Shown: positions 1-15,187 of the stretch, one piece after another | Layout of the letters: each line of letters opens with the position of its first letter | How positions within the stretch are numbered: the first letter of the stretch is position 1 | NCBI GenBank assembly: GCA_977020255.1 | Contig: CDROCS010001008.1 | Coordinates: 62,001 to 126,000 of the forward strand | Direction of reading: 5' to 3' | DNA from: Obrimoposthia wandeli | Taxonomy: Eukaryota | DNA length: 64,000 nt | The notes under the pieces: model-generated | Seen by the model: only the letters and a program-made list of their open reading frames with translations | Told to the model about the DNA's origin: nothing | Database searches by the model: none | Made by a program: the position numbers and the translations under genes

Positions 1-3000
1 GGTTCCATCGTGGTACTGGATCATTACTGCTGTTTTCAATGACTTCGGAATTACTACTACTATCTTTCCGACATTGTCGACAATATACAAGATTCCTTCT
101 TTTATTGAGTATTTTTTCGTCATTTCATCGTTTAGATCTCCTTTCACCAACAATTCTTTGATTAGACTCAGTTCTTCATCTTCTTTCTGTTCTTTGATGA
201 TCTCTTTGTCTATTTTACCCGTCTTCAGCAAAATCGTCAGTAGATTTGCTTCTCCTTTTTGGTCATTGGTTTCATCTTGTTCTTCCTCTGGAATTATGTT
301 TCCTTTCTCATCTATATTTGTCAATCTCGATAAACAATCTGCGTTGCCATTCGACTTTCCGGTTCTATAACGGATTTCTAGATCGAATTCGGCCAATTTT
401 AGAAACCATCTGTTTAATCTACTCATCTCATCTCTATGTTTATATAAGAACTGTAGTGGTTTGTGATCTGTATACAGGAATACTTTTTGTCCTAGCAAGT
501 AGTGTCTGTACTGTCTACATGAATACACTATGGCTAGACATTCCTTTTCAATAACAGAGTATCCTCTTTCGGCTCTGTTTAATCCTCTACTCGCATACGC
601 GATGACGTGTTCTCTTCCTTCGTCATCCTCTTGTCCCAATACTGCTCCTACAGCATAGTTACTTGCATCTGTCATGAGTATGAATTGTCGGTTTATATCT
701 GGAAACGCTAATATTGGTGCTTTTATCAGTCTTTCTTTTAAATGCTCGAACACTTGTTGGGCTTCTTCTCCCCATATGAACTTCTCATCTTTTCTCGTCA
801 ACTTTCTCAATGGTGTTGTTATATCTGAAAAATGTTCAACAAATCGTCTATAATAATTCGCAAGACCTAAAAAACTCTGTATCTCCTTAACAGTCTTTGG
901 CGCTAAATGCGCTTTTACTTTCTCGATCTTTGCCGGATCAGGTCGAATGCCTTCTTTCGATACTATATGTCCTAAAAATGTTACTCGCTCTTTAGCCCAT
1001 TCGCATTTTGTAGGTTTAACTTTTAATTTAGCGTTTTCCAGTCTTTTAAATACAACTTCAAGATTTTTTAAATGTTCTTCGAACGTTTTCGAAAATATTA
1101 TTATGTCATCGATATAAACCATCGTGTTTGCACACGATGCGAGTACAAAATTCATGCAACGCTGAAATGTTGCTGGAGCTCCTGTCAGTCCGAATGGCAT
1201 CTTTTCGCATTCGTATAATCCATCTCCGCAGGAAAAGGCTGTTTTGTGTTTATCCTCTTCCTCTATCTCGATTTGCCAGTATCCACTCTGCAAATCTAAT
1301 GTTGTAAAATAATCTGAATTACCCAATTTATCGAGCATCTCTTCGATTCTAGGTAATGGATACACATCTTTTCTTGTGATCTTGTTCAGTTCTCTGAAAT
1401 CTATACAGAATCTCATTTTCCCATCCTTCTTTTTTACCAACACCACAGGTGCTGAGAATGGTGAAAAACTTGGTCTAATTACTCCTGTTTTAGACATGTC
1501 TTCAATCTGACTTTTTACTTCATCTTGTAACTGTAATGGTACTCGATATGGTCTTCTTCTGACTACTTTGTCTTCTGTCAGTGGTATTGTATGTTTTATG
1601 ACAGGTGTTTCTCCTATGTCATATGGATTTTTTGCAATTACTTTCGGAAATTTATGTATTAGATCAAGTAATTGTTTCTTTTCTCTAGTTGTCAATCTTT
1701 CTGATTGGATTACTATTTCTTCGTAATCATTCGTATCTTTATCGAGTTTCATAGCACACACGGTGGGATTCTCCATCTGTGCTATCTTTCCCAACCTCAT
1801 TCCTCTGTATAATAGAATGTCATTGTTGGTTGTATTCATCAGTCTAACTGGTATTTTGTGGTTTTCGATCAGACATACTGTACTCACAACTGGTAATTCG
1901 TATTTCTCTATGAAATCTTGTGATGGTTCGAACACAACTGGTCCTTTATCTTCTGATAATGTGTGACCTTGAATGAGAAATTGTGATCTTTTACCGATTT
2001 TTATAGGATTCTCTATAATTACATCAATTTGGTTTATTTGTCTGTTTGATGTGCTATCCTTCAATCTCGGATCTTGTAAATCAATACTTATCCCTTTAAG
2101 TTGTGATAGTACATCCATTCCTAAAATTGTAGGTTCAGGACATTCTTTCATGATTCTAACTGGTATAGTGATCGTATTACGTCCAATTATAAATGTACAT
2201 GGTAATATTCCCGTCACTTTAACAGGGTCTCCATTGACCGATACCAAGAATTCATCTGGTTCTGCCATTGTTCGTTTCTGTTCTTCTGTCAAACAGTCTT
2301 CACTTACTATCGAAGCTACATCACCTGTATCAATTAAGGCTTTTACTCTTAAATTATTTACTCTAATGATAGCTGCTGGTCGCTGTGCTCCATTTATATT
2401 TCCCATATGGTATATTGTATTTATCGAATTATTACACTCTGTCGGTCCACTTCCTTTGTTTGGATAGTGAAATCTAATGTTTCTCACTTGTCGATCTATT
2501 ATTCTTCGACAAATCGGACATGATACCATTTCATTCGCACATCTCCGACATGTTCTTACATGTCCGCATGGTAGAAAGGCAACTTCTATTTTGTTGACCA
2601 TGTAAACTGCACATTCCGGATCTTCTAGTACGTATTCTAGTTCATTTATGTACTCTTTCTCTTTTGTTTCAATTGTACTGTCATCTTTATCTTTTAGTAA
2701 TTCAAAAATTGATCCGTATCCATTTCGCGTAGTTTTTATTTTTAATTCTACCAAATCTCTGATTCTTTCTGCTTCTTTTGGATATAACCTTCTCACGAAT
2801 GACACTACTGGTGTGTCTTGTTGAGCCAAAATCTCTTTCCGTGTGATTTGGTATTCGATTATACATTCGGTTTTCTGTTCTTTTTGCTTTATTTTGTTTT
2901 TAAAAGTACAAAATTCGCAAAATTCATGATGTAAAATTTTCTTAGGTAGCTCAAGAGTATATCTGTCGTTAATTCGTTCTTTTTTACACTTGTGGCATTT

Positions 3001-3681
3001 AATTACGTCTTTACCATCCTTTTTTATAGCAAAAAGTCCCTTTTTTGTCAATTTTTTAAGTCTTGGATCTTCGAAAGTTATTTCTCGATACTGTTCGTCA
3101 CATTCGTTCACTTCTCGCATAACTTCGAATATATCTTCAATTCGGCTATTTGTTATTACTCTACCTGTTATTAGAGCTGATTTTCCTTTTGGAATCTCGT
3201 CACTGTAATCGAAATCGGGTGCTTTTCCTTTTTGGATTTCTGGTACGTTTGACGTTTTCAGTTTCAAAAGAAATGGACAATTTGGTGCATCTCTTTTATG
3301 ACGTCTCATTGGGTTTTCATTCTTTTCCCACTCTCTAAACTTTACTCTACACCATACGCATCGTACTACTATCTCATGACCATAACTGCTTGTCGCGTTT
3401 AACATTTCTAAACCTGATCTTGCCATTTTACGTGCCATTTCTTTTGAATAGTACAGTTCTAATATATTTCGTCTCTTTTTCTCGAATCTCATGGGATCCT
3501 TTTCTGACAGATTCACATATGTTATTTTCCTCCTCGTCATCTCTTGTGGTCCGAGGTTTACGTTTTTGTAGTGAAGTATCGACTTTACTAGCGCTTCCTG
3601 TTTTTTGTCTTGGTACGAATTTCCCATACGGAACGTAGTGTATTTTTCCTTTTCGACATTTTTATCTCTCTCACTGAACTG
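1..3681 (-). CDS. pol: ORF2/Pol polyprotein: BIR-BIR-UBA-RING-protease-RT-RNase H-(integrase start); open at the window edge
   Basis: I translated it codon by codon from 3681 (after TGA 3682-3684) to base 1 with no stop (1227 codons). First ATG is at 3627. It is in the -1 frame relative to ORF1 and overlaps it at 3588-3681. It ends ...VVIPKSLKTAVMIQYHDGT, the start of the integrase Zn-binding region. Confidence 0.96.
324..684 (-). other. RNase H domain
   Basis: FILMTDASNYAVGAVLGQ...AYASR...YSVIEKECLAIV...YTDHKPL...NGNADCLSRL. Confidence 0.97.
841..1551 (-). other. Reverse transcriptase domain
   Basis: PYRVP...SPFSAPVVLVKKKDG...YIDD (1105-1116)...FLGHIVSKEGIRPDP...FLGLANYYRRF. Confidence 0.98.
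2085..2385 (-). other. Retropepsin aspartic protease 2 (in Pol)
   Basis: VKALIDTGDVASIVSE (DTG 2323-2331)...VSVNG...PTILGMDVL. Confidence 0.92.
2497..2613 (-). other. IAP-type RING finger (second Cys replaced by Tyr)
   Basis: CAVYMVNKIEVAFLPCGHVRTCRRCANEMVSCPICRRII matches the IAP RING pattern CxxC(M)xxxIxVxFxPCGHxxxCxxCAxxxxxCPICR. TAC at 2602-2604 stands where TGC is expected. Confidence 0.93.
2689..2820 (-). other. IAP-type UBA domain
   Basis: QDTPVVSFVRRLYPKEAERIRDLVELKIKTTRNGYGSIFELL resembles the cIAP UBA as I recall it (NTPVV...KILTTGENYKTV). It lies between BIR and RING, as in XIAP/cIAP. Confidence 0.7.
2905..3099 (-). other. BIR domain 2 (divergent)
   Basis: YREITFEDPRLKKLTKKGLFAIKKDGKDVIKCHKC...LHHEFCEFC: RxxTF, G-aromatic, DxxxCxxC, C-x2-C-x18-H-x6-C. 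Confidence 0.7.
3268..3492 (-). other. BIR domain 1
   Basis: KMARSG...VVRCVWCRVKFREWEKNENPMRRHKRDAPNCPFL has the exact canonical C-x2-C-x16-H-x6-C spacing, plus W and the terminal PxCPF. Confidence 0.92.
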
Positions 3682-5042
3682 TCATTCTTATAACTCTTGT
3701 TGTTTGGTAATATAATTATTCCTTCAAACATTCTTATTACGTCCATCCCAATCATGACTGGACTTCCGCAATCTGTGAATATTCTAGCATTTAACTGTAA
3801 TGCTCTTCCATCGATATTTAATGAACATTTCAGTGTTCCTTCCGACACTACATCTGTACCATTCACGTTAACAAATGTCTGTTTTCTAGGACATACTTCT
3901 CTTAATTCTTTTGATGACAAGATTTCTTTACTCAGTACTGATACTGCAGATCCAGTATCAACTTCGGCAAGATATTCTCTTCCGTTCAATGTTACTGCTA
4001 CTTGTGGTGGAGCATTTGGATTCTCATTTGATATCCTAGATTTCAGAATTCTTCTGGAATTATCTTTTTTGTCTTTTTCCTCTGCTTGTGGAATCTCACT
4101 GTAGCTCACTTTAGGCCATCTTATCATTAAGATGCCTCTCTTGAACTTTTCCTTCTCTTCCTTTAGTTCCTTCATTGGGTATAGGTTTAACGCCACTTCT
4201 TCCTTGTCTGGTAACGGAATCTTTGGTTTTCCTGGTATCTTTGCATATACTCCTGGGCTATCATTATCGTCGTCGTCTCGATAGTTTCTTGGTTCTCGCA
4301 TCATGGTTCTCGTTTGATGTTGCTTCTTCTTGAGGGCTCGCAACTCGTTCTCGTGATGATGGTGCATTAGATATTTTGCTAAAAATGGAAAACATCCAAT
4401 TATAAGTTGCCAGGTGATTCCGGTTATCCTGTATAAACTATACGTAGACAACACCTGGGCTATAATTACCTGTACAAATTTAATTATAACATAAATACCT
4501 ATGATACCCGAAAATAATTGTCCTAAAACAAGGAATTTCCCCCACATCTTTCTAAGTGTCTGATGTGCTGCTTCCTTGAAATGACTTGGTGATAATAACA
4601 TATCAAAATTCGCATATCTAGCTCCTGGTGGTAATGCTCGATGTACCATCTCCGTAAGTACTCTGGCTCTTTTTACTGGAAACATTATTTCGTTCCATGC
4701 CGCTTTTAAATCTTTTTCATTGTACAATCCTGCGTTCTCCATATTTTCTACCGCTTCAAATTTCATTTTACCTTTAAGATTCGTCATTCTTATCATCGCT
4801 GGAGTTTTCGTTGGCTTTCGATCAGGTAGCGTTATCCATAGATCATTCGTCATCTGATATTCAGGTGCCATTATATTAGAGCAGCTGATTTCTTTAGTTG
4901 GAGTGTCTTTTGGAAGTATCATTCTCGTGATTGGTTCAACAAAGAGTTCTTTTAAATTATACGTTACTGCCAATTCACTCGTACATCGATCTGTTTTTCT
5001 CAACTGTACCTCTACTTTATTACACTTGTAAGTATACAACAC
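3588..5042 (-). CDS. ORF1 C-terminal part: glycoprotein C-half, TM, cytoplasmic tail, protease 1 (in frame with 5043-9875 across one TAG)
   Basis: Same frame as the upstream ORF (ATG GGA TAG GTG TTG). TM/amphipathic segment MWGKFLVLGQLFSGIIGIYVIIKFVQVIIAQV (about 4365-4547). Protease motif LAEVDTGSAVS...VMIGMDVI. Confidence 0.9.
   Translation of the reverse strand: MLYTYKCNKVEVQLRKTDRCTSELAVTYNLKELFVEPITRMILPKDTPTKEISCSNIMAPEYQMTNDLWITLPDRKPTKTPAMIRMTNLKGKMKFEAVENMENAGLYNEKDLKAAWNEIMFPVKRARVLTEMVHRALPPGARYANFDMLLSPSHFKEAAHQTLRKMWGKFLVLGQLFSGIIGIYVIIKFVQVIIAQVLSTYSLYRITGITWQLIIGCFPFLAKYLMHHHHENELRALKKKQHQTRTMMREPRNYRDDDDNDSPGVYAKIPGKPKIPLPDKEEVALNLYPMKELKEEKEKFKRGILMIRWPKVSYSEIPQAEEKDKKDNSRRILKSRISNENPNAPPQVAVTLNGREYLAEVDTGSAVSVLSKEILSSKELREVCPRKQTFVNVNGTDVVSEGTLKCSLNIDGRALQLNARIFTDCGSPVMIGMDVIRMFEGIIILPNNKSYKNDSSVREIKMSKRKNTLRSVWEIRTKTKNRKR
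3600..3606 (-). promoter_or_regulatory. Putative -1 ribosomal frameshift slippery heptamer A_AAA_AAC
   Basis: ORF1-frame codons ACA AAA AAC AGG AAG CGC TAG. It has X_XXY_YYZ form in the correct phase, three codons before the ORF1 stop, and the -1 frame is Pol. Confidence 0.75.
3725..4010 (-). other. Retropepsin aspartic protease 1 (end of ORF1)
   Basis: PQVAVTLNGREYLAEVDTGSAVSVLS (DTG 3951-3959)...VNVNG...SPVMIGMDVI. Confidence 0.92.
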
Positions 5043-6218
5043 CTATCCCATGGTTTTAGCAAATACTCCTTCATCCAAGGGTAATAATGGTGCTACCATG
5101 TCTGGATTCGTAATAGCTAATACTAGCTTTGTTCTTACGATCTCTTTGTTTAGCTGGCAATCTCTTTCGATCATCATCCGATATAACTGTTCCATTTGCA
5201 TCAATCCTTTATGATAATAGAAATCAATTTTATTATTAAAATACGTGTGTAGCTGCATATCTCTAGGTTTTAGCTCGGTTTCTGCCAATGCTATTGCTTC
5301 TTTGGACAAAACTATTCCAGGATAGTTTGTAGTACTAACAGTCATTCCGCATCGCGCTTTGTTTCTCTTTTTAATAAATATCAATCCTTCTTCTATTGAT
5401 GTTGCCATTAACAGTGTAGGTGTCTTTGTCATTGGAATTGGTCTTGCTTCATTTAGCAATCCTTTTCCAACTTTATTATACAGGAATCCTTCTCCATCTT
5501 TATTATACAGGAATCCTTTTATTTTGTTAAAGCTAATCTCTTTCAAAAATACTAAAGAGCATTGCTTCGGATTCACGTGATACACAATTGTGGATTCGCC
5601 TGTAAAACAAGATGTATCTGTCATTTTACATTCTGGATACTTCATCATTAGTTGTGTCTTTTTATCAAAATTGGCAGTCCATGTTTTTAATTCAATTTTG
5701 TAAGTTACGTCCATTACTAACTCGGTTACTTTGGTTCCACGCACGTTTTTTGTTCCTCCGTCACAAGATCCATCAGCCCATCGTTGTCCGACTCTCGTGA
5801 CTGTTTCGTATCGTCTTAGTCCAATTTTTACATCAGGTTTGTAATTCTTGTCTACTTCTATTGTTCCCGTTCGAAATGCGTCCTCGCAATCTCTCGGCAA
5901 AACCTTATGTGCTTTGTACGATGTGGTAGGTGTGATTTCCGACATAAAACTTCTATGGCCACAATAGAATTCGTGATAACTTGAATGGATTGAACATTCT
6001 TTCACTTCTACTTGTACTTTATCAACGTCCTGATACACAAAGTAGTTTTCAACATCTTTAACTTCTAATTTTGACGGTTGTGATTCTGGACAGTCTTCGC
6101 TGTCAAGCAGTGAATACTTTTGTCCCATCTTTGGTATGCTACAGTCGTATGCTATCAATCCTGATGCCTGTTGCATTCCCATGAACATTACTAACATCAT
6201 CATCATTGTTGTGGACAT
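4365..6218 (-). other. env: Envelope glycoprotein, chuvirus G / herpes gB-like (class III fusogen), with internal signal peptide
   Basis: Hydrophobic MMMMLVMFMGMQQASG is followed by LIAYDC...SLL...DC, FYCGHRS, DCEDAFRTGTI, DGSCDGG, a Cys-rich ectodomain, DCQLN, KCNKVEV and a C-terminal TM. I recognise these motifs from chuvirus-type glycoproteins; no search was run. Confidence 0.8.
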
Positions 6219-9200
6219 ATTCGGCTGATTGTTTCTCTCTTTCGGACGGTATTGTTTATTTTCTCTTTGACGATTCTCATGACATTGTTCGTCATCGTCT
6301 TCATTCATTTCCACAATGGTTTTAGCGTAGTCACTTAATTTTGCCCAACCTCCGTTTTCGTCAATTCGTCTCTGTAATACATTCTCGATCAAATACATCG
6401 CTTCATTTATTCCTTGTTTGACTTCGTGAGGTTGGCTCATTCGTTCCGTCAATTGGAAACATAGATATGTAATCGCTGTAATTAACTTTTTATTTGTAGT
6501 CTGGTTTCCACACAATCTCGCTAAAACTTCACCGTCATAAAATCTATCTATTGATGCATGGTATACATGATTCGCAGTCATTCTCTTTACTGCAGACATC
6601 TGTGATCTAACTGCTTTAGTCAAATTGTCTGTTATATCGGTTGTTTCATCTCTGTACATTTTGAACAACTTCGGCTTCACTTGTCTGAGAATTCCCGTAA
6701 GTATATCTTTACTACTTGGAGTTTCCGAATTCATATCACCTCTGATATCTTCATTCCGCTCCGTACTATACTGCTCTAATGACGCTGCTAACTGTCCAAT
6801 GCTTAGATGTCTCTCTTCATCAGTTTGTGGTGCAGTTAGAACATTTCGTAATATACTTCCGTCTTTTCTAGGTCTTCCAGGTCCTCTTCGAAAATACTGA
6901 TACTCAGTTTGATTCTCTCCTGGATCATACGGTTCACCATTATACTGTATTTCTTGACTTGGTCCTTCTTCTTGGCCAATCTCTTCATTTTGTCGCATCA
7001 TCTGCTCTGCTTGTCTATCTTTGTATGCAGCATGCCAAATTGGTGAATCTAAATCTACAATTTCGGAGATTTCATCTTCTCCTACTAGTTGGTTTACGTT
7101 TTCGTTTTGTCTCGCTTGGTTAGCTGTATCCGTGACTTCATCTTGTCTGATTTGAATTATATCTGGTTCTGGTGGTACCTCGACCACTGGAGTTGTCAAC
7201 TCATTTTCTAAATTCATGTCTTGTAATTCAGCTACGTACGGTTCTGGTGTGGATGTCTTGTTCCAAGCTTCAGCTACATCATTATCTCCGCTTTCGCTTG
7301 AACTGTCTAAAATTTCTATAGGCGTTTTTATCATTTCTAACGCAGAATTTAATATCTCCGTTAATCCTTCATTATCTACTAACTCTTGACGTCCTACAGT
7401 GATGACATCAATTTTTTCCTCTAATTCATTTCCTATCGGATATCCACACTCGACTGGTACGTCCTCATCATCTAGTGATCTCCCTTTATAATGGAACAAC
7501 ATATTCATTCCATCAATTTCAAGTTTCTCGGCCAACTTTTTCCGAATAGTTTTCATTGTCTGATACACGTTAAGTTTTTCATGTATAATATGTCCGGAAA
7601 TTAATCGAAGTGAAATTTTCATCGTTCCTTTTTGGTTTGATCTCTGTACGTAACGATCATATCCTTTCAATAATCCTCGTGGTACTTCTTTGTAACCCAA
7701 GTTATCATGACTATGTTTAACCAATTCTGCTCGCACTTCTTCCAATCTGTGCACTTTAATTGTTTGCAATTTGGCCAAAACTTCTGGAGCTTCACTCGTT
7801 TCATCTAACGGTTGATTCAACGTCTCCTTAGCTTCACTAATTATCTTTTTTACATTTTCCATACTCGTAGCATTTCTGGCTGCTTCTACATGATCAGTCA
7901 TAGGTTGTGCGTTACACGTTTTCTCTATTGGTGTCTCATACGCTTCTAGTATTTGATTCATTAACTCATTCATCTCTTCTCTCGAGTGTAGACTTTTTTC
8001 TTGTTTCGACAACGTAGATGAATTCGCCATCTTTGTATGTGGTGAATCTTTAATTATTCCCAACATTCGTTCAAATTTACTATCACTATCTTCAAAATCT
8101 ATTTCGCGTCGAAGTTCGGTCTCGCGATTCCTATCGCTGTCATCGCTTACATAACTAAAATTTCCCTTCGGCTTCGGCGAACTCTCACGACTATTTGTCT
8201 TGTCAACATTATTATTATTATATCTACCGGAATTATTATATCTCTCAGCTCCTTGCTGTCCTACATAATTATTGTATCTCTCAGCTCCTTGCTGTCTGTC
8301 TGCATAGTTATTGTATCTACCTGGTGACTGTTGTCTATCTGTATACTGATTATTCGGTCTCCATGGCTGTGGAGTATATCCACCACCTCTATTCCATGGC
8401 GGAGGTGAATTATATCCTCTATAATTATTTCCAAAATTATTATTACCGAAATTATTATTTCCAAATCTGTTAGTTCCGAACTCCTTACTTCTCGTACAAT
8501 CTCTCGAATAGTGACCCATTTGTTTACACGTGTAACACATTATTCTCCCTCGAATATCTATCTTATTTTGTTCATCTTCGAACTGTACTCGACGACTATT
8601 CTGTCTATTATCATAGCGTCCTCTAAAATCATTTCTTCGGAAATTCGATTCAAAACCGCTTCCTCGATTATTGAATCTTCCGTCACTACTTCCTGTATTA
8701 TTTCCAAATCGAGAGTCACTTCGCTCTCCTCTGTTTGCGTTGTAATTCCTATCGTCTCCTCTCCAAGGTTGGCGATTTCCTGAATTATCTCTATTAAATC
8801 TATTCCTGGAATCATCTCTATTTCTATTCCACGAATCATTACCATTTCTACCTCTTGAATCATCTCGATTCCTGTTCCAAGACTCACTATTATTTCTACC
8901 TCTCGAATCATCTCGATTCCTACTTCGGAAATTATCTCTGTTTCCGTTACTGGATTCATCTACTTTTTCAAACTTATTTTGTCCATAATTTCGATTCTGA
9001 AAATTACTCGGTTCTGTTTTATTCACAAATACCTTTGTCTTATCGTCGTCACCTGCAGTCATTGCGTAAATTGCCAATGCTGCGTTATTTTTTATATTTT
9101 TCTCAATCTCTCTCGCCTTTCGCACGGCGTTATCAAAATCATTTGTATCCGATACTGCTAATAACACTTTAATATCTTTTTTCAATCCTCCTCTAAATAT

Positions 9201-9875
9201 ATCTAACAAAACCTCTGCCATTTCATTTTGGTTCCGGTCGTTTTCCGCTGCTTGTGCTTCTTGAGCTACAGGAATACCGTCCTGATTTCTCATTATTCTT
9301 CTTGGGTACGCTCTTGCGGCCAAGGTTCTCAAAACATACGCGTATTCATTCACACCTTCGTCATGTTTCTGTTTCCGTTCTCTCATGAGTCGCTTATTTA
9401 CTTTGGCTAAGTCTCCTAATACCAATTTTCCAATAAAAGCATTTTCCAACGTTGGCCAGTCTAAACGTTCTGCTTCTGTCAAATGTTTATACACTTCAAG
9501 TGCTAATCCGGTTAAGTGTGCCTGTACTCGGACACATTTTTCTTTATCGTTCCATCCTTGAACATCTGCACAACTCGAATATTCTGCGAGGAAGTCACAA
9601 ATAATTTCCTCATCTCCTTTAAACTTTGTAATCTGCAATGATCCTGAAAAGTTGGGTCTCAACGTCGCATTTAAAGCTTGTGCCAACTGTTCGGCATTCA
9701 TGTCACCTACATTATTTCCTGCATTATTATCTGCTTGAGCTCCTGGGTGAGCCATATTTTCAATTATATCCTCTTCAACTATTCCTTCAATATTATTCAA
9801 TTGAACTTCCTCAATCACTACTGGATTGGCAATTTCAAATTCTTCTGGGTTTATGTCACCAAATAATTCAGTCAA
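5043..9875 (-). CDS. gag: ORF1 N-terminal part: Gag (capsid, CCHC), UBL, AT-hook, Bcl-2-like, signal peptide, glycoprotein N-half
   Basis: 1610-aa ORF from TTG 9875; first ATG at 9755. Retrotransposon capsid-like segment ITKFKGD...DFLAEY...GWND...HLTGLALEVY...W..L...F, and zinc knuckle CYTCKQMGHYSRDC. Confidence 0.93.
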   Translation of the reverse strand: MTELFGDINPEEFEIANPVVIEEVQLNNIEGIVEEDIIENMAHPGAQADNNAGNNVGDMNAEQLAQALNATLRPNFSGSLQITKFKGDEEIICDFLAEYSSCADVQGWNDKEKCVRVQAHLTGLALEVYKHLTEAERLDWPTLENAFIGKLVLGDLAKVNKRLMRERKQKHDEGVNEYAYVLRTLAARAYPRRIMRNQDGIPVAQEAQAAENDRNQNEMAEVLLDIFRGGLKKDIKVLLAVSDTNDFDNAVRKAREIEKNIKNNAALAIYAMTAGDDDKTKVFVNKTEPSNFQNRNYGQNKFEKVDESSNGNRDNFRSRNRDDSRGRNNSESWNRNRDDSRGRNGNDSWNRNRDDSRNRFNRDNSGNRQPWRGDDRNYNANRGERSDSRFGNNTGSSDGRFNNRGSGFESNFRRNDFRGRYDNRQNSRRVQFEDEQNKIDIRGRIMCYTCKQMGHYSRDCTRSKEFGTNRFGNNNFGNNNFGNNYRGYNSPPPWNRGGGYTPQPWRPNNQYTDRQQSPGRYNNYADRQQGAERYNNYVGQQGAERYNNSGRYNNNNVDKTNSRESSPKPKGNFSYVSDDSDRNRETELRREIDFEDSDSKFERMLGIIKDSPHTKMANSSTLSKQEKSLHSREEMNELMNQILEAYETPIEKTCNAQPMTDHVEAARNATSMENVKKIISEAKETLNQPLDETSEAPEVLAKLQTIKVHRLEEVRAELVKHSHDNLGYKEVPRGLLKGYDRYVQRSNQKGTMKISLRLISGHIIHEKLNVYQTMKTIRKKLAEKLEIDGMNMLFHYKGRSLDDEDVPVECGYPIGNELEEKIDVITVGRQELVDNEGLTEILNSALEMIKTPIEILDSSSESGDNDVAEAWNKTSTPEPYVAELQDMNLENELTTPVVEVPPEPDIIQIRQDEVTDTANQARQNENVNQLVGEDEISEIVDLDSPIWHAAYKDRQAEQMMRQNEEIGQEEGPSQEIQYNGEPYDPGENQTEYQYFRRGPGRPRKDGSILRNVLTAPQTDEERHLSIGQLAASLEQYSTERNEDIRGDMNSETPSSKDILTGILRQVKPKLFKMYRDETTDITDNLTKAVRSQMSAVKRMTANHVYHASIDRFYDGEVLARLCGNQTTNKKLITAITYLCFQLTERMSQPHEVKQGINEAMYLIENVLQRRIDENGGWAKLSDYAKTIVEMNEDDDEQCHENRQRENKQYRPKERNNQPNMSTTMMMMLVMFMGMQQASGLIAYDCSIPKMGQKYSLLDSEDCPESQPSKLEVKDVENYFVYQDVDKVQVEVKECSIHSSYHEFYCGHRSFMSEITPTTSYKAHKVLPRDCEDAFRTGTIEVDKNYKPDVKIGLRRYETVTRVGQRWADGSCDGGTKNVRGTKVTELVMDVTYKIELKTWTANFDKKTQLMMKYPECKMTDTSCFTGESTIVYHVNPKQCSLVFLKEISFNKIKGFLYNKDGEGFLYNKVGKGLLNEARPIPMTKTPTLLMATSIEEGLIFIKKRNKARCGMTVSTTNYPGIVLSKEAIALAETELKPRDMQLHTYFNNKIDFYYHKGLMQMEQLYRMMIERDCQLNKEIVRTKLVLAITNPDMVAPLLPLDEGVFAKTMG
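6321..6710 (-). other. Bcl-2-family-like domain (divergent)
   Basis: BH3-like ILRQVKPKLFKMYRDE (cf. TLRQAGDDFSRRYRRD), weak BH1-like TNKKLITAITY (cf. VNWGRIVAFFEF), BH2-like LQRRIDENGGWAKLSDY (cf. LHTWIQDNGGWDAFVELY). NGGW is at 6345-6356. Confidence 0.6.
6859..6890 (-). other. AT-hook motif
   Basis: RRGPGRPRKDG contains the GRPRK core. Confidence 0.65.
7386..7622 (-). other. Ubiquitin-like (beta-grasp) domain
   Basis: MKISLRLISGHII...TMKTIRKKLAEKLEI...LFHYKGRSLDD aligns ungapped to ubiquitin 1-52 with identities at M1, I3, G10, I13, T22, K29, K33, I36, G47, L50 and D52. No C-terminal GG. Confidence 0.8.
8496..8537 (-). other. Gag CCHC zinc knuckle
   Basis: CYTCKQMGHYSRDC (CX2CX4HX4C). Confidence 0.97.
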
Positions 9876-9925
9876 ATAAAAGCTGTCGGTTGAAACCGCT
9901 GATTGATTAACGTCTCTTTCTGATA

Positions 9926-10132
9926 CGATTTCTCAAAACTTATCAAATTCCTAACTTCGAGGAACAAATCTACTCGATTTCTCAAAACTTATCAAATTCT
10001 TAACTTCGAGGAACAAATCTACTCGATTTCTCAACACTTATCAAATTCTTAACTTCGAGGAACAAATCTACTCGATTTCTCAACACTTATCAAATTCTTA
10101 ACTTCGAGGAACAAATCTACTCGATTTCTCAA
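9926..10132. repeat. 49-bp tandem repeat, 4 full copies plus a partial, in the 5' leader
   Basis: Unit cgatttctcaaaacttatcaaattcttaacttcgaggaacaaatctact starts at 9926, with full copies to 10121. Confidence 0.95.
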
Positions 10133-10139
10133 AAAAAAC

Positions 10140-10527
10140 TTATCTCAATTTACTTATATCTTCTTCTGAAACTTATTCTAAATTTGCTTATATCTTCTTC
10201 TGAAACTTATTCTCAATTGTCTATATTCTTCTGCTGAAACTTATTCTCAATTTATCTGAAACTTATTCTCAATATCTGAACTTATTCTATTTACCTGAAA
10301 TTTATTCTCAATTATCTGAAACTTATTCTCAATATCTGAACTTATTCTATTTACCTGAAACTTATTCTCAATATCTGAACTTATTCTATTTACCTGAAAC
10401 TTATTCTCAATTATCTGAAACTTATTCTCAATATCTGAACTTATTCTATTTACCTGAAACTTATTCTCAATATCTGAACTTATTCTATTTACCTGAAACT
10501 TATTCTCAATATCTGAACTTATTCTAC
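10140..10527. repeat. Compound ~19/38-bp tandem repeat in the 5' leader
   Basis: Reiterated ctgaaacttattctcaatat / ctgaacttattctattta units. Confidence 0.9.
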
Positions 10528-10552
10528 GTGAATTCGCTGTGTCCGACGAGCT

Positions 10553-10571
10553 ATCCTCACTCGGGACACCA
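10553..10571 (-). promoter_or_regulatory. Primer binding site, complementary to a tRNA 3' end (elongator tRNA-Met-like)
   Basis: Minus strand reads TGGTGTCCCGAGTGAGGAT. The plus strand ATCCTCACTCGGGACACCA ends in CCA and resembles elongator tRNA-Met 3' ends (...ATCCTCACACGGGGCACCA). The tRNA identity is inferred. Confidence 0.85.
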
Positions 10572-11189
10572 CTTTAATATGTTGGGGTTTCTATACGAGA
10601 CTTGTATAGATCCTCTTGTGTGCGGAGGGCCCCAACGTGAGTTCGAATAGAAGCAGGTCTTAAAGTTGGTCGTGGCCTACTTAGTGCTATGGTTGCCTGT
10701 CTCAATTTCTTATCTGAAGGTGTTTGTTTTGACGTCTCTTAATCTGAAGGGTTTAAAACAACGTTTTCTAATGTAGGAAATCGTTTATTGGTAGCACACT
10801 AAACTGAACACAACAATACGTTTACGTACGTATTTTCTAAAAAGTATAGTAAAAATTCCTAAGACTTCTGTAAGTCTCTACAACAAGTGGGGATGAACCA
10901 CGTATCGATTTTACGTTCGGGGTGATCGAGATTTTAGAGTTATTCCTCTGACTCGAGAATGAGCTCACGTTACAGATTTCTCAACAATTTAACTCTGCTA
11001 TCGGCTTGAACTTTTGAGGTTAAACCTTTATTCTTATGTCAATAAAGGTGCGAATGCAAAACTTCTTTCTAAGTTGGTTAATTTATAACACAACTCTTTT
11101 AAAACTTTCTTTTAACTTAGACGAAAACTTAAATCGTGTTGGGTAAAGCTGTCTTTAATTTGGATAACTTTCTATTGTTACGAATTCAG

Positions 11190-11630
11190 ACGAGAATTGT
11201 CAACTTCGGACAATGAATGAATGACCTAATTGTCAACTTCGGACAATGAATCGAATTTAGGCCTAATTGTCAACTGTGGACAATGATTCGTATGGAGGCC
11301 TAATTGTCAACTGTGGACAATGATTCGTATGGAGGCCTAATTGTCAACTGTGGACAATGATTCGTATGGAGGCCTAATTGTCAACTGTGGACAATGATTC
11401 GTATGGAGGCCTAATTGTCAACTGTGGACAATGATTCGTATGGAGGCCTAATTGTCAACTGTGAACAATGATTCGTATGGAGGCCTAATTGTCAACTGTG
11501 GACAATGATTCGTATGGAGGCTTAATTGTCAACTGTGGACAATGATTCGTATGGAGGCCTAATTGTCAACTGTGGACAATGATTCGTATGGAGGCCTAAT
11601 TGTCAACTGTGGACAATGATTCGTATGGAC
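11190..11630. repeat. 37-bp minisatellite, ~12 copies, inside the LTR
   Basis: Unit ggaggcctaattgtcaactgtggacaatgattcgtat; the AATTGTCAAC core recurs every 37 bp from 11228 to 11598. Confidence 0.97.
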
Positions 11631-11780
11631 CTATATGGCTCGTCTCACCTATCCAATCCTAGAGTTTTTCGAGGTCTGGATCCGTGGACTGTCAGAGGGC
11701 TGGCTCTGTTCGAACTCGCCAGTAACGATTTGGTCGGAGAGATGTTTGTCTGTCCGTACTCTTTGGTTCTTCTAGATCAC

Positions 11781-12093
11781 CTCAATTTGTCTTCTTTAAT
11801 TTTCACTCAATTTGTCTTCTTTAATTTTCACTCAATTTGTCTCTTTAATTTTCACTCAATTTGTCTCTTTAATTTTCACTCAATTTGTCTCTTTAATTTT
11901 CACTCAATTTGTCTCTTTAATTTTCACTCAATTTGTCTCTTTAATTTTCACTCAATTTGTCTCTTTAATTTTCACTCAATTTGTTTCTTTAATTTTCACT
12001 CAATTTGTCTCTTTAATTTTCACTCAATTTGTCTCTTTAATTTTCACTCAATTTGTCTCTTTAATTTTCACTCAATTTGTCTCTTTAATTTTC
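11781..12093. repeat. 24-bp minisatellite, ~13 copies, inside the LTR
   Basis: Unit tttaattttcactcaatttgtctc, which produces the LIFTQFVS repeat ORF. Confidence 0.97.
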
Positions 12094-12603
12094 GACTCCA
12101 ATTATTTTTTCTGAAATTAGTTAGTAAAATTCTTTTATACTAATTCCTTACCTCTCAGCAACCGCGACTGTCAATTCTGGACAGCTGAAATAAATTGAAG
12201 TAGTGAGCGCTGCAGTAACTGACTGTGACGCTTCCTGTCACTCAAATTTGGCAGCTGAAATAAAACAACGATTGTTGGGGATTGACTGGCTGAAAATAAA
12301 GTAAACGATTTAATCAATAATCGTAACTTACAGCAATTTCTTCTTTCCTTGATTTCTTTTTCGATTATTTGCTTGCTTTTTGCTTCTTAGTTTATTTTCT
12401 TTTTGCACTTTAATATTTTCCAATCAACCTATATATATAACACATTACACACGACCTTCGTGGTCCTCTTAATATTTACCCCTAATTTTAGTCCTAATAT
12501 TTTAACTCGATTTTAAATATTTAATTTTCAACCTTGCTTTCAAGGATTTTTATTTTAGTATAAATTTAACTAATTCTTTTAATTTTTCAATTCCTAAATC
12601 TAA

Positions 12604-13755
12604 CACATATATTTTAATAACAAAAAGGATTATCATAAAGGATTAATACATAAGGAACAAATATATCAGATGATGGTTGAGTTAGATTGTCAGTTAAATA
12701 AAGAGATACTAAGAGCAAAGTCGGCACTAGCTATTACGAATACAGACATGGTATCACCACTATTACCATAAGATGAAGGAGTATTTTCTAAAATCATGGA
12801 AGAAGTACTGAACAAGTGTAAAAAAGTAATGGTACAATTGAGAAAGACAACTTGCCAGTAACATATCATTTTGTAGAATCAAAAACAAAAAAAGGCTTTC
12901 TAAAGTCACTCAAACTAAAGAAATCAGTTGCTCTAGTATAATAGCATATGAATATCAACTTTTAACGAACAGTGACTCCAGAATTATAAAAATGACAACA
13001 TTAAAAGGTAAGATGGAGTTCAAAGCTGTAAGGAATGTTGAAAATCCAAGTTTATATAATGAGAAAGATCTAAAAGCTGTCTGGGAAGAAATAATGTTTC
13101 CAGTAAGAAGGGTCAGGGTACACACGGAAATGGAGCAACATATGTAAATTTTGATAGGATTTTGTTGGTAAGTCACTTTAAAGAAGCGGTAGATCAAATT
13201 CTTAGGAAAATTTGGGTGGAAATCCTTATTTTATGACAACTATTCTCAGACCTAATATGAATTTATGTCATAATTAAATTAGTACAAGTAATTATAACCT
13301 AGGTGTTGTTCACATATAGTTTGAACATAATAACAGGAATCCCCTGGCAACTTATAACTTGATGTTTACTATTTTAAGTGAAATAATTAATGCACCATCA
13401 TCACGTGATTTAATTGCGAGCACTCAGAAAGAGCAACCGGAAGTTAGAACCGCATCACGAGAACCAAGTCACATACGAGATGATGACAATTACGATAACG
13501 ATGGTCACGGAGACTATTCAAATATGCCAAATACGGTATACGTTAAGATTCCACCGAAAAAATATATAGAAGATTCAGTACCAAATATATACACTGAAGG
13601 AACTAAAGGAGGAAAACGATAAGATCAAAGCAGAAATTCTTAAAATAAAATCCCCCAGAATGACGTCTGATCATCTTCTACTGACAAAGGAACCAAAGAA
13701 GAAAAAGATAATGCAAAAATAATTTTGAGGGAAAGAATATCTAACGATAATACAA
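12604..13755 (+). pseudogene. Degenerate env-region relic of a related element, inverted relative to the intact copy
   Basis: Translates with stops and indels to YFNN...YHKGL...DCQLNKEILR...VFSKIMEEVL, LYNEKDLKAVWEEIMFPVRRVRV, HFKEA..ILRKIW and RISNDN, collinear with ORF1 positions ~5250 to ~4020. Confidence 0.93.
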
Positions 13756-14359
13756 GTTATTTAGCAAAGCATTTTAAAAGGAAATATTTCAAATTAAATT
13801 CTTAAATGAGTAACTTTGAAAATTGGAAACACAAATGATAAATTAAAGAAATCGGAACGTAAAGTAGTACGTCACCCTACAGACGAGCTATTAGGTTGTA
13901 AAAGCGTTAGTGTCACCCTACGAGAGCTTGGGTATTACGGCTGTTCATAGACATTTCGTAAATTGTATTGTTGTAATTAAAGCTTATAATCATTTCTGTT
14001 ATACGTGGTATTAAATTAGACCGAGTAAATACAATTGGTTTTTCGCAAAGATGTGCTGCGCTCCATGAAACTTTAGCAGCACTAACATATTTGTAATACG
14101 GCCGAGACTGAACCTATCAGAAAACCAACCCGTAACCTTTATTGGAAAAGTCAATTCGAAATAGGGTTGTCCGGTTTATAACTTACCATTTACATCTAGT
14201 TTAGGCTCTGCCAGACTACTTTTTGAATTAAACTAATATTGGGCGCAATCGACTACTTTAAGACATACACTACACCACAATAGTTTTGGTAACATATTGG
14301 ATAATTGAACACAACACAAATACACAACAAAAAACATTCAGACATGTATAAACTAGGTT

Positions 14360-14445
14360 GGTCAAGGCGACCAATAAGATCTATCTCTATAGAACTCACG
14401 TTGGGGGCCTACATACGAGAGTTCTAGAATAAAAGTTTCGAAACT
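14360..14445 (+). repeat. Remnant of an LTR 3' end (U5) of the older relative
   Basis: gaccaataagatctatctctatagaactcacgttgggggcctacatacgagag is an inverted, diverged match to 10600-10675 (agggccccaacgtgagttcgaatagaagcaggtcttaaagttggtc). Confidence 0.7.
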
Positions 14446-14709
14446 CCGAAAAATTTCAAAAAATAATTCCAACTCATCTCTAAGTTCAAATTGTTGCTCG
14501 ATTACTTTATCTTGAAAGTCATCCAACATTCGCGAGGAAAAGAAACAAATGGTGACTTAACTGTTTAAAACATTGATATCATTTTGTTTCTAAAGGCCAA
14601 TCTGTAATCTCAATTCTTCCTGATGAAAATCTCCGATAGGTGTTCTACAGCATAAATTAAAAAATTTCAATACTCAACAATATGTGCTGGACTCCCTAAA
14701 AACAGTAAT

Positions 14710-14739
14710 TTTATTATTTTTATTTATGAGTAGTTTATT
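14710..14739 (-). terminator. Candidate AATAAA-type poly(A) signal region of the neurabin gene
   Basis: TTTATT occurs on the plus strand at 14710-14715, 14719-14724 and 14734-14739, ~300 nt downstream of the stop at 15029. Confidence 0.45.
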
Positions 14740-15028
14740 TTCATTCATATAACATTAGAAAATATGTTACACAAACTACAGCATAGTGCTTCTATGAAAC
14801 AGACGGGAGAGATGATAAGTGGAAAGAAGACGAAAGATGAATTATAATAGGAATTATTGAACAAGCGCCACAGCGGAATGTGTGTATGGGTGAGTGAGTG
14901 TGTGTCACAGTGGGTTGGTGTGGCGCCGGAAGAGTATAATCTCGGTCAATTGAGCACATATGGAGGGGCGGGCGGTGATTTGGCGGCAAGCGACAGTTAG
15001 TGGAGGGGCGAGTGGGCAGCACGTCAGG

Positions 15029-15187
15029 CTAGAATTGTGAGGCGTGTTGCACTGATCTGGTTGGTGGAGGCCGCGATTGTGCCGATCGGGCTTGACTGGC
15101 AGCGAGATGGCTCGAGTGGTTTTCCCTCAGCTGCTTGATCTTGCGCTTGAGCACCAATCGATCATTCGAGTTTGTGATACCCATTCG
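15029..15187 (-). CDS. PPP1R9A: Neurabin last coding exon (SAM end, stop TAG)
   Basis: ttccacag|CGAATGGGT; [22 protein letters not shown]...QF*; 53 codons. Confidence 0.88.
   Translation of the reverse strand, partial: RMGITNSNDRLVLKRKIKQLRENHSSHLAASQARSAQSRPPPTRSVQHASQF

What the first reader, a model, noticed from the sequence alone, without database searches (positions are those of the whole stretch)
1..12605. Large gypsy retroelement with an apparent anti-apoptotic and ubiquitin toolkit: Gag-UBL-Bcl2-Env-PR / IAP-PR-RT-RH-IN
Seen: two overlapping minus-strand frames of ~2095 and at least 1227 codons. Besides the canonical gypsy domains they encode a UBL, an AT-hook, a Bcl-2-like domain, a gB-type glycoprotein, BIR-BIR-UBA-RING and a second protease. 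Established: large DNA viruses use vBcl-2 (herpes-, pox-, asfarviruses) and vIAP (baculoviruses, entomopoxviruses) to block host cell death. Env-bearing LTR elements normally place env after pol. Inference: this is a virus-like retroelement that blocks apoptosis at both the mitochondrial and caspase levels while mobilising or infecting. I know of no described LTR element with this architecture, but I could not run a search.
Basis: partly seen in the sequence, partly recalled or inferred. Interest (0 to 1): 0.96.

Follow-up and report, generated by a model that had tools for sequence, protein, structure and literature searches.

The report
Burro-type giant planarian gypsy retroelement
This is a real, large envelope-bearing gypsy retroelement that carries ubiquitin-like, Bcl-2-like and IAP-like domains, but this architecture was already described for the Burro/GYPSM1 elements of planarian flatworms, so it is striking rather than new.

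Summary
On the minus strand of 1-12605 lies the 5' part of an LTR retroelement. ORF1 reads Gag(CCHC) - ubiquitin/SUMO-like - AT-hook - Bcl-2-like - class III fusion glycoprotein - protease. ORF2, in the -1 frame, reads BIR - degenerate BIR - RING - second protease - RT - RNase H and runs off the window.

Exceptions: ORF1 has one in-frame stop inside the glycoprotein, the UBA is not supported, and integrase is not in the window.

BIR, RING, glycoprotein, proteases, RT and RNase H pass Pfam thresholds. The ubiquitin-like and Bcl-2-like domains are below threshold by sequence. Both are supported by conservation in relatives and by fold searches.

The novelty claim fails. Arkhipova and Yushenova 2019 (PMC6431247), citing Jurka 2007 and Grohme 2018, describe Burro/GYPSM1 in planarians. 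They report Gag, SUMO-like, BCL2-like, in-frame mononegavirus-like env, PR, BIR and ankyrin, and they already suggest interference with host apoptosis and ubiquitination.

The window's 70% A+T flanks and a nested second copy fit a planarian genome. I could not match the copy to a named Burro family. Anti-apoptotic function remains an inference.

The parts
10580..12605 (-). Putative 5' LTR, about 2.03 kb, with termini TGTT...AACA. It contains a 24-nt tandem array (11746-12141) and a 37-nt tandem array (11151-11705).
   Evidence: The sequence was read, the termini and the arrays. The outer end is fixed by homology to another copy's glycoprotein, which starts at 12604 on the other strand, and by the end of the strand skew. 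The inner end is inferred only, because the 3' LTR lies outside the window.
10554..10571 (-). Primer-binding-site-like 18-mer beginning TGG, 8 nt after the putative LTR end.
   Evidence: No tRNA was available for comparison (one search found none in the window), so this part is inferred.
9877..10543 (-). Leader with two further tandem arrays: 49-nt units at 9877-10170 and 39/21-nt units at 10247-10543.
   Evidence: Tandem repeats in Burro non-coding regions are drawn in Fig. 2A of PMC6431247 (legend read).
3588..9755 (-). ORF1, from the first ATG to the stop (the frame is open upstream to 9932). It encodes Gag - UBL - AT-hook - Bcl-2-like - glycoprotein - protease 1. It is broken by one in-frame stop; no frameshift was detected.
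   Evidence: The pieces were searched apart.
9033..9665 (-). Gag capsid-like region (approximate bounds).
   Evidence: The translation was read. It aligns to the Gag part of L001 ORF1, which hits Ty3_capsid.
8493..8537 (-). CCHC zinc knuckle.
   Evidence: Pfam PF00098, 26 bits against a cutoff of 20.8.
7395..7622 (-). Ubiquitin/SUMO-like domain with no C-terminal di-glycine.
   Evidence: The same weak ubiquitin hit appears in relatives L003 and P0122.
6855..6887 (-). AT-hook-like motif (GRP core flanked by R/K).
   Evidence: Relative L003 has Pfam AT_hook at E 0.027 at the equivalent place.
6288..6713 (-). Bcl-2-like helical domain. The BH2-type GGW is invariant in four relatives; the BH1 NWGR motif is absent.
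6159..6218 (-). Met-rich hydrophobic segment, either an internal signal peptide or a signal anchor, at the start of the glycoprotein.
   Evidence: The translation was read. Its role is inferred.
4254..6215 (-). Class III fusion glycoprotein of the mononegavirus/chuvirus G family, with a transmembrane segment at about 4443-4538. It carries the one in-frame stop.
   Evidence: Pfam PF24664 scores 134.7 and 161.3 bits against a cutoff of 27, with collinear profile positions 2-215...378-635. The transmembrane segment was found. The domain is uninterrupted in relatives L001 and L005.
3732..4001 (-). Protease 1 (DTGS active-site motif).
3588..3681 (-). ORF1/ORF2 overlap; ORF2 is in the -1 frame. An A_AAA_AAC heptamer sits in the ORF1 frame at 3600-3606. 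The first ATG of the ORF2 frame is at 3627.
   Evidence: No stable downstream structure was found (z 0.25). Relatives have no such heptamer.
1..3681 (-). ORF2, open for 1227 codons and running off the left end of the window. It encodes an IAP-like module, protease 2, RT and RNase H. Integrase is not in the window.
3268..3444 (-). BIR domain with canonical C-x2-C-x16-H-x6-C spacing.
2896..3084 (-). Second, degenerate BIR-like zinc motif (C-x2-C-x18-H-x6-C).
   Evidence: It is the second BIR stretch in Pfam. The motif was found.
2491..2622 (-). IAP-type RING finger; one of its eight zinc-ligand positions is not Cys or His in this copy.
   Evidence: Pfam zf-C3HC4_3 scores 41.8 bits against a cutoff of 27. 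The cIAP1 RING matches with i-E 2.5e-8.
2092..2385 (-). Protease 2 (DTGD motif).
961..1437 (-). Reverse transcriptase (YIDD motif).
   Evidence: Pfam RVT_1 E 1e-38. The motif was found.
385..774 (-). RNase H.
   Evidence: Pfam RT_RNaseH E 1e-38.
12604..13751 (+). Neighbour: a degraded fragment of a second, different Burro-like element, covering the C-terminal part of its glycoprotein and what follows. It has at least three frame changes. The main element is inserted into it.
   Evidence: tblastn shows 58-70% amino-acid identity to the main element.

Best explanation
Window 1-12605 holds the 5' two-thirds of an integrated Burro-type giant gypsy (Metaviridae-like) LTR retroelement, most likely in a planarian genome, and it is inserted into an older copy of a related element.

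Shown:
- A long 5' LTR-like region and leader full of tandem repeats.
- ORF1 = Gag(CCHC) - ubiquitin/SUMO-like - AT-hook - Bcl-2-like - class III mononegavirus-type glycoprotein - protease.
- ORF2, in the -1 frame, = BIR - degenerate BIR - RING - protease - RT - RNase H.

Inferred mechanism:
- The genomic RNA is translated into one or two giant polyproteins.
- The hydrophobic segment after the Bcl-2-like domain sends the glycoprotein ectodomain into the ER. Its transmembrane segment returns the chain to the cytosol, where protease 1 lies.
- The proteases then cut out Gag, the accessory modules, the glycoprotein and the pol enzymes.
- ORF2 is reached either by -1 slippage on A_AAA_AAC or by initiation near the ORF1 stop.
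- The Bcl-2-like, IAP-like and ubiquitin-like modules are host-derived regulators carried to manipulate cell-death or ubiquitin-dependent signalling in cells that express the element. The Burro literature proposes the same.

This particular copy has a premature stop in its glycoprotein, so as it stands it cannot make a complete envelope protein or protease 1.
For: - Domains.
- Architecture shared with independent contigs from other assemblies. L001 has Gag-CCHC, Bcl-2 (E 0.0015), G, PR and Ank, then PR-RT-RH-IN. L003 has UBL, AT-hook, G, PRs and Ank. L006/P0122 has Gag-CCHC, UBL and Bcl-2-like.
- Published description of Burro/GYPSM1 with the same modules in the same order, tandem repeats, thousands of copies, and the apoptosis/ubiquitination hypothesis: PMC6431247.
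- BURRO1 is transcribed and is controlled by piRNAs in planarians: PMC8532177.
- The flanks are 26-31% G+C, matching the >70% A/T planarian genome (PMC11410931).
- The element is nested in a second copy.
- The sense strand is A-rich over exactly the element.
- The slippery heptamer is reported.
Against: - No Burro reference sequence was available, so identity to Burro1-4 or GYPSM1 is untested.
- ORF1 has about 2.1 thousand codons against 4.9 thousand in Burro1.
- MATH/TRAF, ankyrin, Smc and dUTPase were not found.
- The host is inferred from composition only.
- The 3' LTR, integrase and target-site duplication lie outside the window.
- The Bcl-2 and ubiquitin hits are below Pfam thresholds, and both structure models are of low to moderate confidence (pLDDT 62.8 and 52.1).
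- No IAP module was seen in the closest sequenced relatives.
- There is no stimulatory RNA structure after the heptamer and no heptamer in relatives.
- All functional statements are inference.
Confidence: 0.85

Rival explanations
1. Assembly chimera or accidental composite: host IAP, Bcl-2 and ubiquitin-like genes, or two different elements, were joined to a gypsy element by misassembly or nested insertion. On this reading the 'toolkit' is not one transcription unit.
For: There are two protease domains. The region is repeat-rich, and a second related copy abuts at 12604. No IAP module was found in the closest relatives.
Against: The domains lie in two long open frames with a single stop. The order UBL - Bcl-2-like - G - PR recurs in independent contigs from other assemblies and in the published Burro description, which also lists BIR. 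Multiple proteases are a family trait; L002 has six. The A-rich strand skew is uniform over the whole element.
Confidence: 0.04
2. Same element, different job for the accessory modules. On this reading they act on ubiquitin-dependent innate-immune or NF-kB/TRAF-type signalling, or on turnover of the element's own proteins, and not on mitochondrial apoptosis or caspases. Poxviral Bcl-2-fold proteins and type I BIR domains work this way.
For: The BH1 NWGR motif is absent. The BIR has Met where cIAP1 BIR3 has a Trp, which to my knowledge is part of the IBM-binding groove (alignment). The module sits with a RING and a ubiquitin-like domain. Burro1 additionally carries MATH_TRAF_C.
Against: The BH2 GGW is invariant, and a Lys is invariant where Bcl-xL has its BH1 Arg, across four relatives. 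The best fold matches are BH3-binding anti-apoptotic proteins. Nothing here discriminates between the two readings directly.
Confidence: 0.3
3. A dead fossil: the copy, and perhaps its whole family, is an inactive relic, and the accessory domains are decaying remnants without present function.
For: There is one in-frame stop in the glycoprotein. One RING zinc ligand is missing. The neighbouring copy is heavily degraded.
Against: Only one stop occurs in more than 3300 codons. The protease DTG and RT YIDD motifs are intact. The tandem arrays are 95-100% identical. BURRO1 is reported as abundant and transcribed. So the family is probably young even if this copy is defective.
Confidence: 0.25
4. 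A domesticated host gene cluster derived from a retroelement (co-opted env, IAP or Bcl-2), as opposed to a mobile element.
For: The open frames are long. Accessory domains of host type are present.
Against: The full gag-PR-RT-RH set is retained. An LTR-like terminus with a PBS-like site is present. The element is inserted into another copy. It has a premature stop in env. The literature reports thousands of copies.
Confidence: 0.02

Closest known systems
Burro1-4 / GYPSM1 giant gypsy-like LTR retrotransposons of planarians (Schmidtea mediterranea, Dugesia/Girardia tigrina). Sources: Jurka 2007, Grohme et al. 2018, Arkhipova and Yushenova 2019 (PMC6431247).
   Same: - Gag with CCHC.
- A SUMO/ubiquitin-like domain followed by a BCL2-like domain.
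- An env in frame between gag and pol, related to mononegavirus fusion glycoproteins, followed by PR.
- BIR present.
- Tandem repeats in the non-coding parts.
- An A+T-rich, repeat-laden genomic setting with nested copies.
- The same proposed role in apoptosis and ubiquitination.
   Different: - ORF1 here has about 2.1 thousand codons, against 4873 to 5140 aa.
- pol lies in a separate -1 frame.
- No MATH_TRAF_C, ankyrin, Smc/midasin or dUTPase was detected.
- There is one CCHC knuckle, not two or three.
- BIR-RING sits at the N-terminus of the pol frame.
- Sequence identity to the named families could not be tested.
GAG-ENV-POL Ty3/gypsy 'errantivirus-like' elements with class III (gB-type) ENV in Nematoda, Bryozoa and Platyhelminthes. 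Sources: Sacco et al. 2022 (cited, not held); Chary and Hayashi 2026 (PMC13524379).
   Same: Both have gypsy-type pol. Env lies between gag and pol. Env has a class III fold.
   Different: Those elements are described with env as its own ORF. That paper never mentions Bcl-2 or apoptosis. It does not describe duplicated proteases.
Anakin and other BEL/Pao or gypsy elements that captured a chuvirus (Jingchuvirales) glycoprotein in arthropods. Sources: Dezordi et al. 2020 (PMC7642597); PMC10084718.
   Same: The glycoprotein belongs to the same sequence superfamily (Monjiviricetes fusion glycoprotein, PF24664) and is carried by an LTR retroelement.
   Different: Most belong to a different superfamily (Pao). 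Their hosts are arthropods. Env lies after pol. They carry no accessory cell-death modules.
Uncharacterised contigs from environmental assemblies. ENA ERZ25039515: L001, L002, L003 and L005. ENA ERZ27235085: L004. JGI 3300027940: L006.
   Same: They are 45-47% identical in PR-RT-RH. They share the plan gag - UBL - (AT-hook) - Bcl-2-like - G - PR(s) / PR - RT - RH - IN.
   Different: They have no BIR/RING. They carry ankyrin repeats, up to six protease domains, an RNase_T ORF and extra ORFs after pol. Their G+C is about 40%. Their hosts are unknown.
Viral Bcl-2 homologues (herpes-, pox-, asfarviruses) and viral IAPs (baculoviruses, entomopoxviruses).
   Same: They use the same two host-derived domain families. 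KSHV Bcl-2 is the top fold match, and cIAP1 is the top sequence match for the IAP part.
   Different: Those are separate genes of large DNA viruses whose function has been shown. Here the domains are embedded in retroelement polyproteins and are untested.

Membership tests
Burro/GYPSM1 giant gypsy-like elements | Gypsy-type pol with the order PR-RT-RNase H | tested here: met
   Pfam. Thousands of Ty3/gypsy polyproteins were hit at up to 47% identity.
Burro/GYPSM1 giant gypsy-like elements | Integrase after RNase H, a matching 3' LTR and a target-site duplication | not testable with these tools
   The element runs off the left end of the window. Relatives L001 and L002 have integrase there.
Burro/GYPSM1 giant gypsy-like elements | N-terminal Gag with CCHC knuckles | tested here: met
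   One CCHC knuckle. The Gag region aligns to L001, which has Ty3_capsid. Burro is reported with two or three knuckles.
Burro/GYPSM1 giant gypsy-like elements | Ubi2/SUMO-like domain upstream of BCL2-like | tested here: met
   Sequence evidence is weak. A poly-SUMO-like protein is hit at E 1e-10. The fold search returns ubiquitin/SUMO1/ISG15 only.
Burro/GYPSM1 giant gypsy-like elements | BCL2-like motif directly upstream of env | tested here: met
   It lies below Pfam's threshold, so the call rests on combined evidence.
Burro/GYPSM1 giant gypsy-like elements | env in frame between gag and pol, related to mononegavirus fusion glycoproteins, followed by PR | tested here: met
   PF24664 is found in the gag frame, then a protease. 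There is one in-frame stop in this copy.
Burro/GYPSM1 giant gypsy-like elements | BIR domain | tested here: met
   44.6 bits against a cutoff of 22.9.
Burro/GYPSM1 giant gypsy-like elements | Ankyrin, MATH_TRAF_C, Smc/midasin and dUTPase motifs | tested here: not met
   No Pfam hit. These motifs vary between the described Burro elements, so they are weak as defining features.
Burro/GYPSM1 giant gypsy-like elements | Giant size (internal region up to 25 kb, ORF1 about 4.9 thousand aa) | tested here: inconclusive
   12.6 kb from the 5' end to RNase H. ORF1 has about 2.1 thousand codons. The total length is unknown.
Burro/GYPSM1 giant gypsy-like elements | Sequence identity to Burro1-4 or GYPSM1 references; planarian host | not testable with these tools
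   No reference sequence is held. Exact look-ups were empty. Only the composition points to a planarian.
IAP proteins (BIR plus RING E3) | BIR zinc motif C-x2-C-x16-H-x6-C | tested here: met
   Supported by Pfam and PDB searches.
IAP proteins (BIR plus RING E3) | C-terminal C3HC4 RING with all eight ligands | tested here: inconclusive
   The Pfam and cIAP1 RING matches are significant. One ligand position is not Cys or His. The RING is followed by protease 2 and is not at a C-terminus.
IAP proteins (BIR plus RING E3) | UBA domain between BIR and RING (cIAP type) | tested here: not met
   Only a non-significant stretch (i-E 340). No Pfam UBA hit.
IAP proteins (BIR plus RING E3) | Binding of caspases or IBM peptides | not testable with these tools
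   Sequence alone cannot show this. A groove Trp of cIAP1 BIR3 is Met here.
Bcl-2 family | Bcl-2 helical-bundle fold | tested here: met
   The model has pLDDT 62.8 and pTM 0.64. Nearly all of the top 50 PDB matches are Bcl-2 family, with probability 0.97-1.0, target-normalised TM-score 0.5-0.63 and E 0.015-0.2.
Bcl-2 family | Pfam PF00452 at the gathering score | tested here: not met
   12.8 bits in the window and 19.4 bits in L001, against a cutoff of 31.4.
Bcl-2 family | BH1 (NWGR) and BH2 (GGW) motifs | tested here: inconclusive
   The BH2-type GGW is invariant in four relatives. NWGR is absent, with an invariant Lys at the Arg position.
Class III viral fusion glycoproteins (Monjiviricetes G) | Profile match over the ectodomain, an N-terminal signal and a C-terminal transmembrane anchor | tested here: met
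Class III viral fusion glycoproteins (Monjiviricetes G) | Uninterrupted reading frame | tested here: not met
   One in-frame stop. The frame is open in L001 and L005.

The most novel reading that the evidence does not exclude
This copy may represent an undescribed, compact two-ORF lineage of Burro-like elements in which a BIR-RING module heads the pol frame. With the 45-47% identical contigs from unrelated environmental assemblies, it would show something broader. Retroelements with an in-frame mononegavirus-type env preceded by a conserved ubiquitin-like plus Bcl-2-like pair would then be a widespread, modular clade, not a planarian curiosity.
Probability: 0.3. Interest if true: 0.4.

Novelty: already known. 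Interest (0 to 1): 0.2.

Why it matters
Retroelements that carry host-type cell-death and ubiquitin regulators inside their polyproteins, together with an RNA-virus fusion protein in frame with gag, are a rare bridge between transposons and viruses.

They are abundant in planarians, whose stem-cell biology depends on controlling both transposons and cell death.

That significance was recognised in 2007, 2018 and 2019. This window adds one more annotated, slightly defective copy. It also adds the side observation that relatives with the same core plan occur in environmental assemblies of unknown host.

Tried and rejected
- IAP region against long proteins and, cut out, against IAP-sized proteins in the 5.8-billion-protein collection: nothing at E<=0.001 or E<=0.01. 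The source of the IAP module could therefore not be traced.
- Full HMMER search with the Gag-to-G middle region: only two hits.
- IMG/VR scans with the IAP region and the middle region: nothing.
- Exact-sequence look-ups for the transposase and ORF1: absent, so the host could not be named.
- tRNA and Rfam scans of the window: empty.
- PDB sequence search with the N-terminal glycoprotein piece: nothing meaningful.
I used the admissible two-row alignments instead, so both models rest on shallow alignments.
- Sacco 2022 and Grohme 2018 are not held. The supplements of PMC13524379 are not held.
- An LTR inner end at a TAACA near 11180 was rejected because no PBS follows it.
- A splice acceptor just upstream of the glycoprotein signal segment was not seen.
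- A stimulatory RNA structure after the slippery heptamer was not found.

Full report
**What is there**

On the minus strand, one frame is open from 9932 to a stop at 3588-3590, apart from a single in-frame stop. A second frame, -1 relative to the first, is open from 3681 to base 1 and runs off the window. I searched the pieces separately and joined nothing.

In the first frame, Pfam finds:
- a CCHC knuckle;
- the Monjiviricetes fusion glycoprotein family PF24664 on both sides of the stop, with collinear profile positions (E 4e-39 and 3e-47);
- a retroviral-type protease.

In the second frame, Pfam finds BIR, an IAP-type RING, a second protease, RT and RNase H. Both proteases keep DTG and the RT keeps YIDD. 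The A-rich sense-strand skew covers 1 to about 12000-12600 and stops there.

**The weak domains**

IAP module:
- It is closest to cIAP1/BIRC2 in the PDB (E 2e-12; RING i-E 2.5e-8).
- The first BIR has the canonical zinc spacing. A second BIR-like motif is degenerate.
- The UBA is not supported.
- The RING lacks one of its eight ligands in this copy.

Ubiquitin-like domain:
- It is below threshold by sequence.
- The only library proteins matching the middle region are a poly-SUMO-like protein and a Gag-CCHC-UBL protein of a related element.
- The same weak ubiquitin hit recurs in relatives.
- A low-confidence model (pLDDT 52; core 62-76) has the beta-grasp order of elements. It retrieves only ubiquitin, SUMO1 and ISG15 (E 2e-6 to 2e-5; target-normalised TM-score, TMt, 0.7-0.8).

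Bcl-2-like domain:
- Pfam gives E 0.18 in the window and 0.0015 at the same position in relative L001.
- The segment is conserved in L001, L003 and L006, with an invariant GGW.
- A profile of the four sequences hits dozens of Bcl-xL/Bcl-2 chains over BH1-BH2 at E 0.003-0.05. Two designed helical repeat proteins rank above them.
- A moderate model (pLDDT 62.8, pTM 0.64) retrieves almost only Bcl-2 family structures (probability 0.97-1.0, E 0.015-0.2).
- I take this as a real but divergent Bcl-2 fold. The NWGR motif is absent.

**Ends and expression signals**

- The 5' end at 12605 (TGTT...) is fixed independently. From 12604 onwards the opposite strand encodes a degraded piece of a different, related element's glycoprotein (58-70% identity, at least three frame changes). 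So the element is a nested insertion.
- A TGTT...AACA unit of about 2.03 kb is followed, after 8 nt, by a TGG-initiated PBS-like 18-mer. This is a plausible LTR, but the 3' LTR is off the window.
- The LTR and leader hold four tandem arrays.
- ORF2 overlaps ORF1 by 94 nt. An A_AAA_AAC heptamer lies in the ORF1 frame 10 nt before its stop.
- No stable structure follows the heptamer, and relatives lack such a heptamer. Frameshifting is therefore only one option.
- A Met-rich hydrophobic segment directly precedes the glycoprotein, and a transmembrane segment follows the ectodomain. This fits co-translational insertion from within a polyprotein. No splice acceptor is evident upstream.

**Relatives**

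- The PR-RT-RH part finds thousands of Ty3/gypsy polyproteins.
- The nearest, at 45-47% identity, are contigs from environmental assemblies.
- Their loci show the same plan: gag - UBL - (AT-hook) - Bcl-2-like - G - PR(s), then PR - RT - RH - IN.
- Variable extras include ankyrin repeats, up to six protease domains, an RNase_T ORF and ORFs after pol.
- None of these relatives has BIR/RING. Searches with the IAP part found nothing.

**Comparison with what is known**

Arkhipova and Yushenova 2019 (PMC6431247) summarise Jurka 2007 and Grohme et al. 2018. They describe the giant gypsy-like Burro elements (Burro1 = GYPSM1) of the planarian Schmidtea mediterranea and a relative in Dugesia tigrina as follows:
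- Gag with CCHC knuckles;
- a Ubi2/SUMO-like domain before a BCL2-like motif;
- an env 'in-frame ... between gag and pol' with hits to mononegavirus fusion glycoproteins, followed by PR;
- BIR, ankyrin, RING-type, MATH_TRAF_C and dUTPase motifs.

They already propose that these domains meddle with host apoptosis and ubiquitination.

Further context:
- BURRO1 is abundant, transcribed and under piRNA control (PMC8532177).
- GAG-ENV-POL gypsy elements with class III env are reported in Nematoda, Bryozoa and Platyhelminthes (PMC13524379).
- Chuvirus-type glycoproteins have been captured by LTR elements in arthropods.
- The window's flanks, at 26-31% G+C, match the >70% A/T planarian genome.

**Verdict**

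The interpretation as an env-bearing gypsy element with a cell-death and ubiquitin toolkit is structurally right. The claim of an undescribed architecture is refuted by the literature.

The element differs from the published Burro1 in several ways:
- a shorter ORF1;
- pol in a separate frame;
- no MATH, ankyrin or dUTPase;
- BIR-RING at the head of the pol frame.

I could not compare it with Burro2-4 or name the host. It may therefore be either a described family or a further member.

Function is inferred only. An alternative is that the modules act on ubiquitin-dependent signalling, not on caspases or mitochondria. This copy has one stop in its glycoprotein gene and no other break that I detected.

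**Housekeeping**

- The window has no N runs.
The consensus lines printed by the alignment tool were not used.

- Before I knew the frame was broken, a script output and my first notebook entry listed the bounds of the open stretches. These give away the place of the in-frame stop.
- Two script outputs listed tblastn segments by frame for the neighbouring degraded fragment. These imply where its frame changes lie.
- I stopped doing this, deleted nothing and repeat none of those places here.

Noticed in passing
window 12604-13751 (+): A degraded fragment of a second, different Burro-like element: the C-terminal glycoprotein part and what follows. It is 58-70% identical at the amino-acid level to the main element and has at least three frame changes. 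It begins exactly at the main element's 5' end, so this is a nested insertion.
   Followed up: partly
window 51304-51510 (-): A short RT-like fragment, about 34% identical to the element's RT and to those of its relatives.
   Followed up: no
window 17529-18488 (+): An intact 319-aa Tc1/mariner transposase ORF with Tc3-type HTH domains and DDE_3. The exact sequence is not in the protein collection.
   Followed up: partly
window 15577-16077 (-): A 166-aa ORF with a SAM domain, in a locally G+C-richer, GC-skewed stretch (14000-16000). Its origin is unknown.
   Followed up: no
window 30832-31226: A tandem array of a 92-nt unit, four to five copies at 87-97% identity.
   Followed up: no
window about 12290-12335 and about 12110-12155 (-), inside the putative LTR: Two GTAAG...(about 45 nt)...TTTCAG pairs that look like mini-introns or splice signals.
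   Followed up: no
L002:1544-13814 (ENA ERZ25039515 contig_59439): A relative with four protease domains in ORF1 and two more in ORF2, so protease duplication is a trait of this group. The contig also holds a second, unrelated RT/integrase element on the other strand.
   Followed up: partly
L001, L003, L004, L005, L006: Relatives from environmental assemblies of unknown host. L001 and L003 carry the gag-UBL-Bcl-2-like-G core; L006 has gag-UBL-Bcl-2-like and L005 gag-G-PR. Extras include ankyrin repeats after PR (L001, L003) or in pol (L004), an RNase_T ORF after pol (L004) and unannotated ORFs of 440-540 aa after pol. Four of them come from one ENA sample.
   Followed up: partly
window 4254-6215 (-): The glycoprotein ectodomain of this copy has no N-x-S/T sequon. 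Relatives have only one to three, and all have 14-18 cysteines.
   Followed up: partly
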